IMG/VR virus record: IMGVR_UViG_3300046660_000488
Span: 310,001-374,000 of that record
Length of the DNA stretch: 64,000 bases
Strand: one strand, 5' to 3'
Shown here: in pieces, positions 46,395-52,223 of the stretch
Position numbering within the stretch: position 1 is the stretch's first letter
How the letters are laid out: every line of letters starts with the position of its first letter
The notes under the pieces: generated by a model
Told to the model about the DNA's origin: nothing
Database searches by the model: none
Seen by the model: only the letters and a program-made list of their open reading frames with translations
Made by a program: the position numbers and the translations under genes

Positions 46395-47735
46395 TTACTT
46401 GGTCTCTTCGACGTAGGCGCCGTGCAGCGCGTCGGTGAACAGGGTTTCGAAATCGATGCCCTCGGGGATGCCGCCAGCGACCACCAGAGTGGGGCTGATG
46501 GACGACAGAAGCTCTTGTGCCGCTTCGATCACTTCGTCGCGGGTCACCGACCGGTAGCGGTCGAGCAGGACTTGGTCCGACTCCGCCTCGCCCTTGGCGA
46601 ACAGTTGGGTGGCGACCGAGTCCGTCACATAGTCCGGGTTACGGTTCTGGGACAGTTGCTGGAGGATGATCTGGTTGCGCGAGCGCGTCCAGTCGGCTTC
46701 GGTGACTTCGCCCTGCGCGATGCGAACCAGTTCGCTGATCGCCGTCTTCAGAAATTCGACGACGTTGCCGGTCGAGGCCGAACCCTTGATGACGAAGAGC
46801 GACAGGTCTGCGTTGCGGAGCAGGCCCGAGCCCACCGAATAACAGAGAGCCTTGCGCTCGCGGGTGTTCTGGAACAGCGGTGAGGACATGCCGCCGCCCA
46901 GCACGTTGGCCAACATGGCGTACTTGGTCAGCGACAGGTCAATCGAGCCCGGCGCCGGGAAGGCGACGTACATGTGCGATTGCTCGAAGCGGTCGTCCTC
47001 GTGGATGGTCACGCCGCCGACGTACTGGGCCGGTTCGATGGCGACGGCCGGAGCGCGCTCCAGATGGCCGAAGTACTTCTCGCCCATGGCGACCAGAGCG
47101 TCGTGGTCCACGTCACCGGCCGCGATCAGCAGCATGTGCTCCGGGTGGTAGAAAGTCTTGACGTAGTTGAACAGGTCGTCCTGCGTGAACGACATGACAT
47201 TTTCGGACGTGCCAAGGATTTCGCGGCCCAGCGGAGTGTTGCCGTAGGCCGTCAGGTCCAACTGGGCGCGGGCGATGTGCGAAATCTTGTCGCCGTACTC
47301 GGCGATCTCTTCGCAGACCACGCCCTTCTCGCGCTCGATCTCGTCCATCGGGAAGGTGGCGTGACAGACGATGTCGGCGAGGATTTCCACCGACTTCTCC
47401 ATGTGCTCGCTCAGGCCCTCGACCAGATAAGAAGTGGCGGCCTTGCCGGTGGCGGCATTCACGTAGCCGCCGAGCACTTCGATCTGTTCGGCGATTTCCT
47501 TGACGTTCCGGTGCTTCGTGCCCTTGAACAGCACGTGCTCCAGATAGTGGGTGATCCCGTTCAACTCGCTGGTCTCGTTGCGAGCGCCGACCTTCGTGTA
47601 GACCGTGACCTGAACCTCGCCCGGCGTGGGACGCACGGCGCTGACCACGCGCAACCCGTTCGGGAGCGTGGTGATGGTGACGCCTTCCTTGGCGGAGACG
47701 ATGGTGTCGGGTGCGGTCTGGGTCAGGTTGGTCAA
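46395..47735 (-). CDS. M16 family (pitrilysin/MPP-like) zinc peptidase
   Basis: TLPNGLRV, HYLEH inverted zinc motif, NAATG, EREKGVVCEEI, LGGGMSSPLFQ; TTG start after AGGAG. Confidence 0.92.
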   Translation of the reverse strand: MTNLTQTAPDTIVSAKEGVTITTLPNGLRVVSAVRPTPGEVQVTVYTKVGARNETSELNGITHYLEHVLFKGTKHRNVKEIAEQIEVLGGYVNAATGKAATSYLVEGLSEHMEKSVEILADIVCHATFPMDEIEREKGVVCEEIAEYGDKISHIARAQLDLTAYGNTPLGREILGTSENVMSFTQDDLFNYVKTFYHPEHMLLIAAGDVDHDALVAMGEKYFGHLERAPAVAIEPAQYVGGVTIHEDDRFEQSHMYVAFPAPGSIDLSLTKYAMLANVLGGGMSSPLFQNTRERKALCYSVGSGLLRNADLSLFVIKGSASTGNVVEFLKTAISELVRIAQGEVTEADWTRSRNQIILQQLSQNRNPDYVTDSVATQLFAKGEAESDQVLLDRYRSVTRDEVIEAAQELLSSISPTLVVAGGIPEGIDFETLFTDALHGAYVEETK

Positions 47736-47868
47736 AGGAACTCCTTGAAACTGAAAGAGCACGGTAGACTGAAAACACGATCTCGTCAACCAGTTTTACT
47801 CTGTGCTGTATAGATTTCTCTCAGAATAGCAGAGAGAAACGCCAAAACCAATTTCCACGTTTGGCCGC

Positions 47869-47879: not shown

Positions 47880-48494
47880 ATGGCCAACGAAATCGACATC
47901 GAAAAGATTCAGGAATCACCGCACCTTCTGGACATGCTGCTCCAGATGGAAGACGTGCTTGATTCGCTGGACATCTACGTTTTCAAGAACTGGTACAAGG
48001 GCGAGGTGGTCGAAGGACCCGGCGTGCGTCGGTATTGGCTCGATTTCACGCTGAAGTACAAGCACAACCAGATGCCCGATCCCAAGGCCGCCATGCGGTT
48101 GATCAAGCACGGCATCCGCGTTGACTTCTCCAAGGGTACGGAGAAATCCAAGGAATACAACGCCAACTACGATCAGACGGTTCACGACGACACTGTTCCA
48201 GTGCAGAAGGGCGACGCCCCGCCGGAAGAGAAAGACGTTCGCCCCGAGGACACGGTTTGGCTGGTGGCCATCAGCATCCCGCGTCGCCTCGTTGCTGAAC
48301 TGTCGGCCGAGCAGATCGACAACGAATACGACGACGAAGTCGATATCGAGGACGTCGATGACGCCATGGATACCGGCATCGACGACGAGAGCGAGGTCAT
48401 GGCTGACGAGAACGGCGCGTCCGCTGACGGCGCGGCTGATCCGATGGCCGACATGGGCGGCGCGCCTCCGCCTCAGCAGGGAGCGCCCCAATGA
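47880..48494 (+). CDS. phage protein with acidic C-terminus
   Basis: LDIYVFKNWYKGEVVEGP..RRYW; late motif. Confidence 0.75.
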   Translation: MANEIDIEKIQESPHLLDMLLQMEDVLDSLDIYVFKNWYKGEVVEGPGVRRYWLDFTLKYKHNQMPDPKAAMRLIKHGIRVDFSKGTEKSKEYNANYDQTVHDDTVPVQKGDAPPEEKDVRPEDTVWLVAISIPRRLVAELSAEQIDNEYDDEVDIEDVDDAMDTGIDDESEVMADENGASADGAADPMADMGGAPPPQQGAPQ

Positions 48495-49249
48495 TGAAAC
48501 TGGTTGAAGGTATGCGTCACGGCGATCTGGAAGACATGGTCCTCCAGATGATCAGCGTGGACGAGTACGAGAGCAAACTGGACGATTCGGCAATCGTCAT
48601 CGGCTTCTATGTCAACGACAAGGACGCGGCCGACGACCTGAACCGCTTCATCCAAAAGTCGGCGGTCGAACTGCTGGACACCGAGGTGTCTCCGGCTCCG
48701 GACCAGCACGGCTACTACATGGTCTTCGTCGAGCTTCTGAACGACATCAAGATCGTGGACAACATTGAGGCGATTTTGGCCGAGGTCTCCGCATTGGTTG
48801 CGGACGACAAGTGGCAAATGCAGGTCTACGGCATCGACAAGGTGCTCGATTTCTCGCGTAAGGTACTCAAAAATAGGTTCGATCAGCTTCGCCACGAGCC
48901 CAAAAATGACGACGACGAGCGCACCGAAAACGAGAGCCGCGTGGTCGAATTTTTGGAAAACAGCGATCTGTCAAATGCTCTCTATGAAAACGAGCATGTT
49001 GAGTTGACTTCGCTCTGCGGTAACTTTCGTGGGCTCGTTGTGAGCATGGGATCGTACGAAGACGTGATCTCGCGCAATGGGCTTGAGAATACCGCAATCT
49101 CCATGGAGTTCGCCCATATTAGCGAATGCCGGGTGTTGTCTCAAATGCTCGGAGAGAACTGGGTGCCTATGCGTATTGGTGACTACGTTTTGCTCCAGCG
49201 ACATGACACCGATGATGCCCTGTTGCTCAGAAAACCGCTGTTTTTCTAG
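48491..49249 (+). CDS. phage hypothetical protein
   Basis: ISVDEYESKL, IVIGFYV..KDAADDL; ATGA overlap. Confidence 0.75.
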   Translation: MMKLVEGMRHGDLEDMVLQMISVDEYESKLDDSAIVIGFYVNDKDAADDLNRFIQKSAVELLDTEVSPAPDQHGYYMVFVELLNDIKIVDNIEAILAEVSALVADDKWQMQVYGIDKVLDFSRKVLKNRFDQLRHEPKNDDDERTENESRVVEFLENSDLSNALYENEHVELTSLCGNFRGLVVSMGSYEDVISRNGLENTAISMEFAHISECRVLSQMLGENWVPMRIGDYVLLQRHDTDDALLLRKPLFF

Positions 49250-49355: not shown

Positions 49356-49697
49356 ATGTCTGCGTCGTTCGCGGAAATGCCTTCTGCTTCATGGAAGAAG
49401 CTTGACAATTGGAAAAAGCCGAACCTGCGTCCCTCCTTCACCGAGTTGCGTGCGGCCAAGCCCTCTTTTGAGTTCGTCGAGAAACCTGCCGTTTTCGTCA
49501 CGCTTGACGATGTCGTGCTCTTCGATATGCGCGACTGGATTCATAATCGTGTCGCCAAACACGGCGATGAAAATTGCCGCCAGTACGAAATGTACGGCCG
49601 TTTCCATGTCCGGCAGTTCGAGGTCGATTACGTCGGCGCCTCGTTCCGCTTCCTCGACATCCAAGACGCGGTTCTCTTCAAGATGTTCTGGGCCTAA
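49356..49697 (+). CDS. hypothetical protein (paralog family)
   Basis: C-terminus FRFLDIQDAVLFKMFWA. Confidence 0.65.
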   Translation: MSASFAEMPSASWKKLDNWKKPNLRPSFTELRAAKPSFEFVEKPAVFVTLDDVVLFDMRDWIHNRVAKHGDENCRQYEMYGRFHVRQFEVDYVGASFRFLDIQDAVLFKMFWA

Positions 49698-49747
49698 CCC
49701 ACACAACTAGAAGAGTAATATACATCCACCTACACAGAGAGCCCTCG

Positions 49748-49754
49748 CTAAATA
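49748..49754 (+). promoter_or_regulatory. late promoter motif CTAAATA
   Basis: Upstream of TM-PAS pair. Confidence 0.6.
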
Positions 49755-49809
49755 AAGCCGAGGGCTTTTTTGCGTGGTGGTTGCTGTGGAGGGATTTCTA
49801 GGGTCGTTG

Positions 49810-50052
49810 ATGAGTCTTTTGACAAGTGGGAAGAGCGCGGCTGACGTGCTCCCCATTGTCATGAGTCTTGTTATTTGGCATCTACTCGTCGAGCGAAAGA
49901 AGCTCATTGAAGACAACAAGAAAAAAGACGAGAAGATTGATAAAATTTTGGACGATTACTACAAGGGAAACCTGACCCTCACTGAGGCTCTGAATTCCTT
50001 GAAGCTCGTACTTTATGAAATTCGTGGCAATATTACATTTCGTCGGGACTAA
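49810..50052 (+). CDS. single-TM coiled-coil protein (start may be 49774)
   Basis: VLPIVMSLVIWHLL TM then charged helix; ends 3 nt before PAS gene. Confidence 0.65.
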   Translation: MSLLTSGKSAADVLPIVMSLVIWHLLVERKKLIEDNKKKDEKIDKILDDYYKGNLTLTEALNSLKLVLYEIRGNITFRRD

Positions 50053-50055
50053 ACT

Positions 50056-51258
50056 ATGATCTGGCCGTTCAATTCCCGTCGCAAAGTGGATGATCGCCGT
50101 GAGCGCGACATTCTCCGCGATCTGCGCGTGTTGGAAAGCCAGCACGCGCTGCTCGAAGCTGCGACGCAAACGGCCGATGCCGCGAATGTGGTCACCAACA
50201 GCCTGCGCGCCCGTCTTCAGGACAGCATTTCGCAGTTCGAGAACACGGCCCGCATCCTGAATGACGCTTTGGTCATCTGTGACCTTGAAGGCAAGGTTCA
50301 GGCGTTCAACCCAGCCGCTGAGCGCATGTTCAATCTCCCGGCTCGTGACGCACGCGATGCCTTCGTCGGCGACCTGCTGGAATGGGGCGACACCGCGCTG
50401 ACGGACATCGAGTACGTTTGGGAGCTACTGAGCCGCCTCGAAAAGGAAGACGACGACGGCGCCACCCTCAAAGGTGTAGCGTCTAATGGCCGCACCTTCC
50501 CCATCGACGTCAACCACACGCGCTTGGATCGCTCGGACAACTCGGCCATCGTCCTGCTGGTCATCCGCGACATCACGCCATGCGCTGACATCAAGGTCTC
50601 ACTGAAGAGCTACCGGTCGATCTTCGACTCGGCGTTCGACTGCATCCTCGTCATCGACAACGACGACATCGTCGCCGCCAACCCGGTCGCCTCGGAATTC
50701 TTCGGCTACAGCGCAGAAGAGCTTCTAAGCAAGCGTCTGGACGATCTGATCGTCACTGGCCGCCACGACCTCTCCAAGGCCTTCAGCACCGGTGACGACG
50801 CCGTGGACCTGAAAGGCAAGATCGCCGATCACGACGGTCACCAGATGGAAGTCACGTTCACCACCACCACGATCTGGTGGAACGGACGCCCGGCCGCACT
50901 GGTAACGATCAAGGACACCACGAGCGTGTACGTGCGCGCGCCGCAGATCGAGAACTTGATCTGCTGCTTCAACGACAAATTCAAGATCACCTTCGTGAAC
51001 GCGGCCTTCGCCTCGTTCTACGGTCTTGGGCGCGACAAACTGGTTGGGTCGGACATCCGCGCCCTACAGCCGGAGAACGACCGCAGCGCCTTCCTGATGC
51101 ACCTGAACGGGCTGACGCCACAAACGCCGAGCCGCCGCATGCAGCTTCGCACACGCGATCATGACGGCGCCATCTGCACGCAAGTGTGGACTGACAACGC
51201 GACCTTCGACGACGATGGCGTCGAGTATCAGCGTATCGGCCACGTCACCCGCGATTAA
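50056..51258 (+). CDS. coiled-coil plus three PAS domains, no output domain
   Basis: FNPAAERMF..IRDIT, ANPVASEFFGYS..IKDTT, VNAAFASFYG..VTRD; stop directly after third PAS. Confidence 0.88.
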   Translation: MIWPFNSRRKVDDRRERDILRDLRVLESQHALLEAATQTADAANVVTNSLRARLQDSISQFENTARILNDALVICDLEGKVQAFNPAAERMFNLPARDARDAFVGDLLEWGDTALTDIEYVWELLSRLEKEDDDGATLKGVASNGRTFPIDVNHTRLDRSDNSAIVLLVIRDITPCADIKVSLKSYRSIFDSAFDCILVIDNDDIVAANPVASEFFGYSAEELLSKRLDDLIVTGRHDLSKAFSTGDDAVDLKGKIADHDGHQMEVTFTTTTIWWNGRPAALVTIKDTTSVYVRAPQIENLICCFNDKFKITFVNAAFASFYGLGRDKLVGSDIRALQPENDRSAFLMHLNGLTPQTPSRRMQLRTRDHDGAICTQVWTDNATFDDDGVEYQRIGHVTRD

Positions 51259-51881
51259 TGGTGTAGGTCGCCCCACACCTTCATCAACCGATCCAGATAC
51301 GCATTATCTTCCGCCTCGTAGCGGTCGGCCGCGTCCATGTAGTGGTCGTAGAATTCCTCGTCGGTCGTCGGATAGTCCAGAGACTTGCGCTTGCGGCGCT
51401 CGACGTTCCACCAGCGATACAGGATCGCAGCTTCACTCCACGCCTTCTCCAGCGGCCCGTAGACGTCCTGACCATCGGTCTGGGCGCGTAAATCAGCGCA
51501 ATGGCGGTCGATGTTCTCGGCCGTGGCGTAGTAGCGCTCGACATGCTCGGAGAACACCTCGAAGGTGGCGTTGAGCATCCGGATGTCCGTCCCGTGCCAG
51601 CCGGGCTTCAGATAGCGCGGGCGGATGACGTGCTGCTGATGGGTGGTGCGGGATTTGACCCACCAAATCCATTTGTCCAGCGTCCGCCAGTACACGCGGC
51701 GTAAGCCCATGGGCACGGTCCGGGTGATGAACCAGCGCACCGGGAACCGGCTCTTGCGGAAACGGTCGATCCGCTTCCACTTATCGCAGGTCGCGCCCAC
51801 CGGCCCGGTCATGATCAGCCAGCCAAGACCGAACGGCTTTTTCTGCCGGACGTGCCGGGTCTTGCTGTGCATGATGTCCAT
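51255..51881 (-). CDS. hypothetical protein
   Basis: 208 aa, Trp/Arg-rich N-terminal half. Confidence 0.65.
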   Translation of the reverse strand: MDIMHSKTRHVRQKKPFGLGWLIMTGPVGATCDKWKRIDRFRKSRFPVRWFITRTVPMGLRRVYWRTLDKWIWWVKSRTTHQQHVIRPRYLKPGWHGTDIRMLNATFEVFSEHVERYYATAENIDRHCADLRAQTDGQDVYGPLEKAWSEAAILYRWWNVERRKRKSLDYPTTDEEFYDHYMDAADRYEAEDNAYLDRLMKVWGDLHH

Positions 51882-51884
51882 GGG

Positions 51885-52223
51885 TCAACCCCTAAGCCAA
51901 ATCAACCAGATCGCAAACCAGACCAGCTTCGCACCATAGTGCAGGAACTGGTCGGTCTTGTAGCCGATCTTTCCTTCGCACTTGGCGAAGTCGATCAGGC
52001 CGTGAGCGACGGTCTCGGCGAGGGCCAGCCCAACCGATTGCGTCAAGACGCCGACCACCGCGCCGTGGATCAGGCTATGGGCCGACAGGATGAAGGGCCA
52101 GTGGTCCTTGCCCTGCGGCATGTTGCGGTTCTTTCCGAAGGCGACGTATTCGCTCTGGGAAGCATAGTCAGCCCAAGCGTGGCCCGCTATCAGCAGGAAC
52201 AGGGTCAGGAGTGGGGTAAACAT
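51885..52223 (-). CDS. DUF3307-like membrane protein
   Basis: GHAWADY..Q, HSLIHG, HGLIDFAKC, DQFLH. Confidence 0.75.
   Translation of the reverse strand: MFTPLLTLFLLIAGHAWADYASQSEYVAFGKNRNMPQGKDHWPFILSAHSLIHGAVVGVLTQSVGLALAETVAHGLIDFAKCEGKIGYKTDQFLHYGAKLVWFAIWLIWLRG

What the first reader, a model, noticed from the sequence alone, without database searches (positions are those of the whole stretch)
49748..51258. Late-expressed TM peptide plus output-less triple-PAS protein: a phage sensor or kinase decoy
Seen: late motif, a single-TM coiled-coil ORF, then 3 nt later a coiled-coil-PAS-PAS-PAS protein stopping right after the third PAS, with no kinase, GGDEF or HTH output. Known: alphaproteobacterial cell-cycle kinases (DivL, CckA, PleC, PdhS) signal through PAS arrays. 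Inference: a split membrane-anchored sensor that poisons or rewires the CtrA pathway, or senses redox or energy state to time lysis.
Basis: partly seen in the sequence, partly recalled or inferred. Interest (0 to 1): 0.75.

Follow-up and report, generated by a model that had tools for sequence, protein, structure and literature searches.

The report
Huge-phage membrane anchor plus PAS pair
A 578-kb phage carries a late-expressed gene pair, a small membrane protein and a three-PAS "sensor" protein with no output domain. The pair is conserved across uncultured huge phages, probably forms a membrane-tethered sensor complex, and has no known function.

Summary
An ~88-aa single-pass membrane protein (49786-50052) is followed 3 nt later by a 400-aa protein (50056-51258) made of a long N-terminal helix and three PAS domains, with no output domain. 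A convergent gene overlaps its stop. The 578-kb genome has no HisKA, receiver or GGDEF domain.

It is not a truncation. About 65 relatives with 2, 3 or 4 PAS domains all lack outputs. Most with long contigs sit on 240-607 kb phage contigs.

The small gene lies upstream in 27 of 27 assessable loci. Remote small-protein relatives are likewise followed by PAS-only genes, in unrelated neighbourhoods.

The best-conserved segments of the two proteins are the small protein's cytoplasmic helical hairpin and helix residues 21-54 of the PAS protein. These are also the predicted 2:2 interface (ipSAE 0.38, best control 0.09, weak support).

CTAAATA is enriched in the window (9 found, 0.77 expected) and precedes portal, baseplate and tail genes. 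The genome encodes a gp55-type late sigma factor.

The split membrane-anchored sensor idea is supported. The CtrA-decoy idea is not: the family spans loci of 29-64% GC and has no close cellular homologue. Cofactor, signal and output are unknown. Lysis timing is only a hypothesis. Sinorhizobium phage Phosso is the one cultured carrier.

The parts
49732..49775 (+). Hairpin followed by a T-run. Terminator-like element after gene 49356-49697, with the late motif in its apical part.
   Evidence: RNA fold dG -20.2 kcal/mol, z -4.75, 0 of 200 shuffles as stable. Equivalent hairpins enclose the motif in close relatives L008, L009, L011 and L012 (z -3.8 to -8.5). It is weak in L014 and absent in L015, L018 and L007.
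49748..49754 (+). CTAAATA, a T4-type late-promoter-like motif, 31 nt upstream of GTG 49786.
   Evidence: 9 copies in the window against 0.77 expected. Copies precede the baseplate hub, portal, tail and virion genes. An xTAAATA lies upstream of the small gene in at least 23 of 28 related loci. A gp55-type sigma factor is encoded in the genome.
49786..50052 (+). Small membrane protein gene, 88 aa from GTG 49786 (the mechanical ORF starts at 49774, 92 aa). No Pfam or PHROG family.
   Evidence: 89 homologues of 56-128 aa. 176 representatives at 50% identity, all but one 51-162 aa. Start chosen by alignment to homologues.
49837..49890 (+). Transmembrane segment of the small protein (residues 22-39 in 92-aa numbering). 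Inferred orientation is N-terminus out, C-terminus in.
   Evidence: Kyte-Doolittle 19-residue maximum is 1.78 here and 1.2-2.8 in relatives. It is followed by an R/K-rich stretch. It forms the first part of AF2 helix 22-63. Topology is inferred from the positive-inside rule.
49906..50037 (+). Cytoplasmic helix-turn-helix hairpin of the small protein (residues 45-88), with the conserved ..DDYYKGN.. turn motif. Predicted docking surface for the PAS protein.
   Evidence: Invariant Y62, A72, L76, V79, L80 and E82; near-invariant I55, I58, D61, G65, N66, L73, K77 and K84. Median identity 0.68 against 0.30 for the N-terminus plus TM. Interface residues 55-88 in the predicted complex. Helices 22-63 and 69-91.
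50056..51258 (+). Gene for a PAS-only protein of 400 aa with three PAS domains and no output domain.
   Evidence: Pfam PAS_9 2e-24, PAS 2.6e-20, PAS_4 1.3e-17, three stretches each, and no other domain. About 65 output-less relatives. It is the only PAS gene in the genome.
50116..50217 (+). Conserved Ala/Thr-rich segment of the N-terminal helix (residues 21-54). Predicted to bind the small protein's hairpin.
   Evidence: Near-invariant S28, Q29, L32, L33, A35, A36, T39, A40, A43, V46, T47, L50 and L54. All 13 lie in the predicted interface. Median identity 0.59 against 0.46 for PAS1. It is part of AF2 helix 4-69.
50263..50571 (+). PAS1 (residues 70-172). Best sequence match among solved structures is the FixL/DosP haem PAS, but the haem histidine is missing.
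   Evidence: AF2. PDB profile search: FixL 3e-10, DosP 3.5e-9. No conserved His in the F-alpha region 113-130; W122 is conserved in 53 of 59.
50641..50916 (+). PAS2 (residues 196-287).
   Evidence: Pfam PAS/PAS_9 at 186-289. AF2.
50956..51252 (+). PAS3 (residues 301-399). It ends one residue before the stop and starts with conserved vicinal Cys303-Cys304.
   Evidence: Pfam PAS_3 at 312-395. AF2. Conservation. It is absent from the 2-PAS variants L020-L022.

Best explanation
This is a conserved two-gene module of huge phages that builds a two-subunit, membrane-tethered PAS complex with no enzymatic transmitter.

Proposed steps:
1. A gp55-type late promoter (CTAAATA), lying inside the terminator hairpin of the preceding gene, drives a translationally coupled message.
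2. The ~88-aa product inserts in the inner membrane, N-terminus out and C-terminus in.
3. Its highly conserved cytoplasmic helical hairpin clamps the conserved Ala/Thr-rich N-terminal helix (residues 21-54) of the PAS protein. A dimeric array of three PAS domains is thereby held under the membrane, probably as a 2:2 helical bundle.
4. The protein, its relatives and the whole genome lack any kinase, receiver, cyclase or DNA-binding output. Any signal read by the PAS domains must therefore be passed on by protein-protein contact. The most economical route is through the helical bundle to the membrane partner, or to a factor recruited there.
5. The likeliest role is to couple a host physiological cue (ligand, redox or energy state) to a late, membrane-located step of infection. 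Lysis timing is the leading candidate.

Shown: gene anatomy, domain content, absence of an output, strict pairing across phages, and the conserved promoter motif.
Predicted only: the physical complex and its interface.
Inferred: topology, sensing, and the step controlled.
For: Anatomy.

Not a truncation:
- About 65 relatives of 264-440 aa are all output-less. Contigs with a full-length member include 287, 295, 415, 517, 549, 555, 568 and 570 kb; a 282-aa member lies on a 576-kb contig.
- The 2-, 3- and 4-PAS variants all lack outputs.

Pairing:
- The small gene lies upstream in 27 of 27 assessable loci found from the PAS side. 25 are abutting or overlapping; 2 are split by inserted ORFs.
- 4 of 4 loci found from the small-protein side, including matches at only E 1e-5 to 1e-10, have a PAS-only gene 10-11 nt downstream or overlapping by 4 nt. 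Their neighbourhoods differ (DNA ligase/Topo I; PTH2/AAA).

Conservation: the most conserved parts are the small protein's C-terminal hairpin (median identity 0.68) and PAS helix 21-54 (0.59). PAS1 scores 0.46, the TM region 0.30 and the PAS N-tail 0.25.

Predicted complex: in the 2:2 prediction exactly these segments form the interface. ipSAE was 0.38, 0.38 and 0.35 against a best control of 0.09. The tool's verdict was 'weak support'. In its calibration the mark was reached by 58 of 80 solved complexes and 2 of 110 mismatched pairs. All 13 near-invariant helix residues are interface residues.

No output anywhere in the genome.

Late expression: motif enrichment and position before structural genes, conservation upstream of the small gene across loci of 29-64% GC, and a gp55 homologue.

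Phage-restricted: no relative by pattern scan in 185,579 species genomes, apart from one 3.7-kb MAG contig that carries the same pair.
Against: - The complex prediction is only a weak pass. It used my own alignments, so conservation and predicted interface are not independent.
- Covariation over 44 pairs was inconclusive. 11 of the top 50 pairs fell in the interface against 1.6-2.9 expected, but the region-block control gave only 19 against 12.6.
- No cofactor or ligand signature is conserved. The FixL proximal His is missing, and there is no LOV NCRFL or Aer RHPD motif. The PAS domains may not sense anything.
- No expression data exist; no RNA run was listed.
- No link to lysis genes was found in any neighbourhood.
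- Membrane insertion and topology are inferred from hydrophobicity alone.
Confidence: 0.55

Rival explanations
1. Holin-antiholin-like pair. The small protein is itself a membrane-lesion former of BhlA/UviB-like architecture (one N-terminal TM plus a charged helical tail). The PAS protein is its cytoplasmic brake or trigger, releasing it according to redox or energy state. This is a sharper version of the best explanation.
For: Small size, single TM, highly charged C-terminus and a late promoter. The language-model feature search places it near Holin_BhlA clusters (score 0.90; 18 of 100 hits). 4 of 80 family members give weak Pfam Holin_BhlA hits, best E 1.4e-4. No T4-type holin T was found in the genome, but that search rang in no control either, so it is uninformative.
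Against: The window's protein does not match PF10960 even at E 10. Comparable weak hits go to unrelated TM-plus-helix families such as DUF1722 and DUF948. Its C-terminal sequence is far more conserved than is usual for holins. No endolysin or spanin is adjacent in any context seen.
Confidence: 0.17
2. Non-sensory scaffold. The PAS domains serve only as protein-protein interaction modules. The membrane-tethered array organises or localises some late process, such as assembly, packaging or an envelope contact, without reading any signal.
For: No conserved cofactor-binding signature. The number of PAS domains varies from 2 to 4 while the N-helix and PAS1 are kept. In the window's clade the pair sits beside virion-protein genes and is under the same late motif.
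Against: The neighbourhood is not conserved in distant carriers. PAS1 keeps a strongly conserved polar cluster (D158, R159, D161; H154 in 36 of 59) and W122, which hints at a specific ligand or partner site. There is no evidence that the protein is in virions.
Confidence: 0.17
3. One reading: a decoy that heterodimerises with host PAS-containing kinases (DivL, CckA, PleC, PdhS, or host PAS kinases in general) and poisons or rewires host signalling.
For: PAS domains can heterodimerise (established knowledge). The protein has no output of its own. The only cultured carrier infects an alphaproteobacterium.
Against: The family spans loci of 29-64% GC. Stray contigs are binned with Prevotella, Cytophagaceae and Oxalobacteraceae, so it is not tied to the CtrA pathway. 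The nearest cellular proteins are generic multi-PAS kinases at 23-30% identity, E 4e-21 or weaker, with a sharp gap below the phage family. There is therefore no sign of mimicry of a particular host kinase. Late expression is an odd time to rewire the cell cycle. The most conserved surface is predicted to bind the phage's own partner.
Confidence: 0.08
4. A truncated or decaying host-derived sensor kinase gene with a chance upstream ORF, with no function.
For: Its PAS domains most resemble those of sensor kinases.
Against: About 65 intact, same-architecture relatives sit on independent huge-phage contigs, with conserved columns along the whole length. The small ORF is conserved in 176 clusters at 50% identity. 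No kinase remnant lies downstream or anywhere in the genome.
Confidence: 0.01

Closest known systems
FixL / DosP haem-PAS oxygen sensors
   Same: PAS1 gives its best sequence match among solved structures to the FixL haem domain (E 3e-10) and DosP (3.5e-9). Multi-PAS arrays of FixL and DosP are among the top Foldseek hits.
   Different: The haem-ligating histidine on the F-alpha helix is not conserved. There is no kinase or EAL/GGDEF output. The membrane anchor is a separate polypeptide.
PpsR (with antirepressor AppA), Rhodobacter sphaeroides
   Same: It is the top structural match (4hh2, E 5e-14). PpsR has three PAS-type domains and a long helix. From my own knowledge, that helical region is where its partner AppA binds. 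A PAS array controlled by a partner that docks on a helix is the closest functional analogy.
   Different: PpsR ends in an HTH DNA-binding domain and is soluble; the phage protein has neither feature. Sequence identity is 14-18% and the global TM-score only 0.22-0.24, so the match reflects the domain type, not a shared arrangement.
VqmA(Phage) of vibriophage VP882
   Same: It is a phage-encoded PAS-domain receptor that lets a phage read a chemical cue (PMC8284805).
   Different: VqmA(Phage) has one PAS domain fused to a DNA-binding domain. It is a homologue of a host receptor and acts as a transcription factor in a temperate phage. Here there are three PAS domains, no DNA-binding domain, a membrane partner, a late promoter, no close host homologue, and a huge phage that appears to be virulent.
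Small membrane-protein partners of sensors (MgrB or SafA with PhoQ; T4 antiholins RI/RIII with holin T)
   Same: A very small membrane or membrane-associated protein works as the obligate partner of a larger signalling or lysis protein (my own knowledge of these systems). The gene pairing and size class are similar.
   Different: There is no sequence or fold relationship. In those systems the large partner has its own output (a kinase) or is itself the holin. Here the large partner is PAS-only.
BhlA/UviB holin-like peptides (Pfam PF10960)
   Same: About 70-90 aa with one N-terminal TM followed by a charged helical tail. The small protein lies near these clusters in the language-model feature search.
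   Different: The window's protein does not match the family model. Only 4 of 80 relatives give sub-threshold hits. BhlA-type holins are not known to pair with PAS proteins.

Membership tests
PAS domain superfamily | Sequence match to PAS profiles above the curated cut-off, and an alpha/beta PAS fold. | tested here: met
   PAS_9 86.3 bits (cut-off 27), PAS 73 bits and PAS_4 64.5 bits, three stretches each. The AF2 model shows three PAS folds with pLDDT mostly 82-97 within the domains. Foldseek hits are all PAS proteins.
Two-component sensor histidine kinase | DHp/HisKA domain with a phospho-accepting His, plus a HATPase_c catalytic domain. | tested here: not met
   Neither domain is present in the protein or in 7 relatives with 2-4 PAS domains. 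No H-box pattern in 59 family members. No HisKA anywhere in the genome in six frames. The only HATPase_c is in a GyrB/Toprim protein.
FixL-type haem PAS | Proximal histidine on the F-alpha helix that ligates haem. | tested here: not met
   In the profile alignment to FixL, the column of His200 falls in a variable region. No column from 113 to 130 has His in more than 12 of 59 sequences, and the window's protein has none there.
LOV (flavin) PAS and Aer-type FAD PAS | LOV: conserved Cys in the NCRFL motif. Aer: RHPD-type motif plus HAMP and MCP signalling domains. | tested here: not met
   0 of 59 family members contain NCRFL, NC[RK]F or RHPD. No HAMP or MCPsignal hit. Flavin binding by another mode cannot be excluded with these tools.
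PAS-HTH transcription factors (PpsR, VqmA) | C-terminal helix-turn-helix DNA-binding domain. | tested here: not met
   The protein ends one residue after the last strand of PAS3. A convergent gene overlaps the stop.
Holin_BhlA (PF10960), for the small protein | Match to the family profile; demonstrated membrane-lesion activity. | tested here: not met
   No match for the window's protein at E 0.1 or in the genome at E 10. 4 of 80 relatives match weakly, best E 1.4e-4. Activity is not testable with these tools.
T4 holin T (PF11031) | Match to the family profile. | tested here: inconclusive
   No match in the genome, but the search rang in no control genome either.
T4-type (gp55-dependent) late gene | A TATAAATA-like -10 element upstream, without a -35; a gp55-family sigma factor in the genome; the motif shared with structural genes. 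| tested here: met
   CTAAATA occurs 9 times against 0.77 expected. It lies upstream of the portal, baseplate hub, tail and virion genes and of this pair. A gp55 homologue matches phrog_12791 at E 3.4e-65 and phrog_234 at 1e-21.
T4-type (gp55-dependent) late gene | Transcript appearing late in infection, starting a few bases downstream of the motif. | not testable with these tools
   No RNA run was listed for this sequence. The DNA source is a rhizosphere metagenome.

The most novel reading that the evidence does not exclude
Huge phages carry a kinase-free sensory device. A PAS array is held under the membrane by a small holin-like protein, reads the host's redox or energy state or a metabolite, and gates that protein's membrane activity. 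That would be a new kind of lysis clock or lysis-inhibition switch, distinct from the T4 RI/RIII-holin T system, and a signalling route in which the membrane partner itself is the output.
Probability: 0.15. Interest if true: 0.85.

Novelty: new variant of a known kind. Interest (0 to 1): 0.6.

Why it matters
How phages sense the state of their host is an active question. The known examples are mostly receptor-transcription factors of temperate phages, such as VqmA(Phage), or peptide systems.

Here a canonical sensory domain appears in a different form. It is expressed late, has no output domain, and is always paired with a tiny membrane protein. The pair is conserved across many uncultured phages of 240-607 kb from hosts of very different GC content.

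Neither protein is in PHROGs, and the small one is in no Pfam family. I found no paper on either.

If the complex is real, it shows how a PAS signal can be transmitted without a covalently attached transmitter. It may also reveal how phages with very large genomes time a late membrane event.

Sinorhizobium phage Phosso is cultured and carries the pair, so the question can be tested directly at the bench.

Tried and rejected
- Truncated kinase or frameshifted output: rejected.
- Haem, LOV or Aer cofactor signatures: none conserved. The cofactor remains open.
- BhlA-holin membership of the small protein: not met. It is only an architecture-level lead.
- T4 holin T search: uninformative, because no control rang.
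- Solved-structure relatives of the small protein: none (best E 0.033).
- Covariation between the two proteins (44 pairs, MI with APC): enriched in the interface set, but the block control was weak, so inconclusive.
- Expression evidence: only DNA runs from rhizosphere and plastic metagenomes hold the sequence; no RNA run was listed.
- Cultured carriers: tblastn with the PAS protein and with three small-protein queries against 50,697 phage records found only Phosso.
- Cellular carriers: two pattern scans of 185,579 species genomes gave one 3.7-kb MAG contig carrying the same pair.
- Literature: five searches and one in-paper search found nothing on PAS proteins of jumbo phages or on Phosso.
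- The generic terminator scan missed the hairpin because its loop-length limit is 8 nt. Direct folding found it.
- The sigma-70-like hit at 50032-50060 is at chance level (3 found against 1.7 expected).
I rebuilt the alignments without them and did not send those sequences elsewhere.
Full report
**Source.** The window is bases 310,001-374,000 of a 578,292-bp IMG/VR virus record with direct terminal repeats. DNA runs that hold the sequence come from rhizosphere metagenomes.

**Observation.**
- A 92-aa ORF occupies 49774-50052.
- Three bases after its stop, a 400-aa ORF runs from 50056 to 51258.
- Alignment to homologues, and a GGTGG 5-6 nt upstream, favour GTG 49786 as the real start of the small gene, giving 88 aa.
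- The small protein has no Pfam or PHROG family.
- Its AF2 model (pLDDT 82.6) has a short N-terminal helix (2-17) and a long helix 22-63. That helix begins with the hydrophobic stretch 22-39 and continues into an R/K-rich segment. A turn at the conserved KGN follows, then a return helix 69-91.
- The large protein has three PAS domains above Pfam's cut-offs and nothing else.
- Its AF2 model (pLDDT 83.9) has a 66-residue N-terminal helix, PAS1 70-172, a linker helix, PAS2 196-287 and PAS3 301-399 of 400 residues.

**No output domain.**
- The convergent gene 51255-51881 overlaps the stop codon, so no frameshifted domain can follow.
- Six-frame searches of the whole genome find no HisKA, Response_reg or GGDEF.
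- The single HATPase_c match lies in a GyrB/Toprim topoisomerase subunit.
- This is the only PAS gene in the genome.

**The late motif.**
- CTAAATA occurs 9 times in the window against 0.77 expected.
- Copies lie 5-50 nt upstream of the baseplate-hub, portal, tail-protein and virion-protein genes, and of the small gene.
- The genome encodes a gp55-family late sigma factor (phrog_12791 E 3.4e-65; phrog_234 E 1e-21).
- An xTAAATA element lies upstream of the small gene in at least 23 of 28 related loci, whose GC content ranges from 29 to 64%.
- At this locus the motif sits in the apical part of a strong hairpin followed by a T-run (dG -20.2 kcal/mol, z -4.75).
- The same arrangement holds in the closest relatives (z -3.8 to -8.5) but not in distant ones.
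- I read this as a compact terminator-promoter junction. Read-through RNA from the upstream gene would fold and terminate. A late transcript starting just downstream of the motif would lack the 5' arm. This last step is inference. No RNA data could be found.

**A family, not a truncation.**
- A search of 5.8 billion proteins returned about 65 relatives at E 1e-36 to 1e-173. They are 264-440 aa long and all carry only PAS families.
- Contigs carrying full-length members include 287, 295, 415, 517, 549, 555, 568 and 570 kb; a 282-aa member lies on a 576-kb contig.
- After these the scores fall sharply to generic cellular multi-PAS kinases (E 4e-21 and weaker, 23-30% identity).
- IMG/VR gave 24 loci, ten of them on contigs of 240-607 kb.
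- Variants with two PAS domains (283-309 aa) and four (553-559 aa) exist. None has an output domain.

**The pairing.**
- Every locus found from the PAS side with enough upstream sequence carries the small gene just upstream (27 of 27).
- In 25 of them the genes abut or overlap (gaps -23 to +123 nt, often ATGA-type overlaps).
- In two, an extra ORF has been inserted between them.
- A profile of the small protein finds 176 representatives at 50% identity among 1.84 billion proteins. They are 51-162 aa long, apart from one 3151-aa protein matched in 28 short stretches.
- Three of the most remote ones (E 1e-5 to 1e-10) were looked up. Each is followed by a PAS-only gene of 293, 547 or 445 aa that overlaps it by 4 nt or starts 11 nt downstream. 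Their neighbourhoods are unrelated to the window's (DNA ligase and topoisomerase I; PTH2 and an AAA protein).
- Pattern scans of 185,579 species genomes found only one carrier, a 3.7-kb contig binned as Prevotella. It holds the same pair with a 10-nt spacer.
- Among 50,697 phage records only Sinorhizobium phage Phosso (469 kb) has the pair. Its small protein is 44% identical and its PAS protein 26% identical to the window's.

**Where the proteins touch.**
- Over 43 paired loci, the best-conserved segments are the small protein's cytoplasmic hairpin (median identity to the window 0.68) and residues 21-54 of the PAS protein's N-terminal helix (0.59).
- For comparison, PAS1 scores 0.46, the TM region 0.30 and the PAS N-tail 0.25.
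- The helix motif is kept in the 2-, 3- and 4-PAS variants.
- A 2:2 complex prediction placed exactly these two segments in contact. ipSAE was 0.38, 0.38 and 0.35, against a best control of 0.09.
- The tool's verdict was weak support. In its calibration this mark was reached by 58 of 80 solved complexes and 2 of 110 mismatched pairs.
- All 13 near-invariant residues of helix 21-54 are interface residues.
- Caveat: the model saw my alignments, so conservation and interface are not independent.
- Covariation analysis on 44 pairs was inconclusive.

**What the PAS domains might sense.**
- PAS1's best sequence match among solved structures is the FixL haem domain (3e-10), then DosP. The haem-ligating histidine column is not conserved.
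- No LOV or Aer motif occurs in 59 members.
- Conserved features that might mark a site are W122, the polar cluster D158-R159-x-D161 (with H154 in 36 of 59 sequences), C75, and the vicinal C303-C304 at the start of PAS3.
- The cofactor or ligand is therefore unknown.
- Foldseek's best hit is PpsR without its HTH (E 5e-14), followed by DosP, Brucella LOV-PAS, MmoS and FixL. Global TM-scores are low (0.2-0.27 by query), reflecting domain type rather than arrangement.
- PAS-only proteins are also common in bacteria. The output-less architecture alone is not unusual. The phage-specific family and its obligate membrane partner are.

**Most likely mechanism.** The late-expressed small protein anchors a dimeric PAS array under the inner membrane through a helical bundle. 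Output is by protein contact, most simply through that bundle to the membrane partner. I put 0.55 on this general model. Within it, control of lysis timing is the leading but untested guess.

**Rivals.**
- A holin/antiholin-like pair (0.17). It rests only on architecture and a weak language-model lead. Profile membership is not met.
- A non-sensory scaffold (0.17).
The family's spread across loci of 29-64% GC, contigs binned with Bacteroidota and Betaproteobacteria, the lack of any close cellular homologue, and late timing all count against it.
- A dead truncation (0.01).

**Novelty.** Neither protein is in PHROGs, and the small one is in no Pfam family. I found no literature. The nearest described phage PAS sensor, VqmA(Phage) of VP882, is a PAS-HTH transcription factor of a temperate phage (PMC8284805). 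I rate this a new variant of a known kind, with interest 0.6.

Noticed in passing
window 46395-47789 (-), 47880-48494 (+), 48491-49249 (+): An M16-family peptidase gene lies beside two 'virion structural protein' genes (phrog_12928, phrog_13138). The peptidase and the first of these are also adjacent in the distant relative L005. The window's own peptidase ORF was not scanned against Pfam; the M16 domains were seen in the L005 homologue. A metallopeptidase next to virion genes could be a maturation protease.
   Followed up: partly
G000:C1:301389-302114 (outside the window; loci L039-L041): The gp55-type late sigma factor sits in an open frame of 329 aa, against 185 aa for T4 gp55. The extra length was not examined.
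   Followed up: partly
L005 (GCA_043956695.1 JBINOA010003469.1, 1,136,180 bp): This contig is almost exactly twice the 568-573 kb of sister contigs that carry close homologues. It may be a head-to-tail concatemer assembly rather than a 1.1-Mb genome.
   Followed up: no
L017 3665-4000; L016 3160-4000: In two relatives the otherwise abutting pair is split. In L017 a short ORF with a weak GIY-YIG match lies between the genes (E 0.009, below cut-off); it could be a decayed homing endonuclease. In L016 a 236-aa opposite-strand ORF with no family lies between them.
   Followed up: partly
window 50962-50967 (Cys303-Cys304) and 50278-50280 (Cys75): Vicinal cysteines at the first strand of PAS3, and a cysteine in the first strand of PAS1, are conserved in at least 80% of 59 family members. 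This is a possible thiol-based redox site.
   Followed up: no
window 51885-52223 (-): A 112-aa DUF3307 membrane protein (Pfam E 3.4e-7; phrog_2470 'membrane protein', moron/host-takeover category) lies two genes downstream on the opposite strand.
   Followed up: no
window 49356-49697 (+): The 113-aa ORF between the virion-protein gene and the hairpin has no Pfam or PHROG match. No ORF of that size occupies this position in L005 or L007. It may be a clade-specific insertion.
   Followed up: no
G000:C1:90816-92762 (locus L042 1333-3279): A 648-aa GyrB/Toprim type II topoisomerase subunit accounts for the genome's only HATPase_c match.
   Followed up: yes
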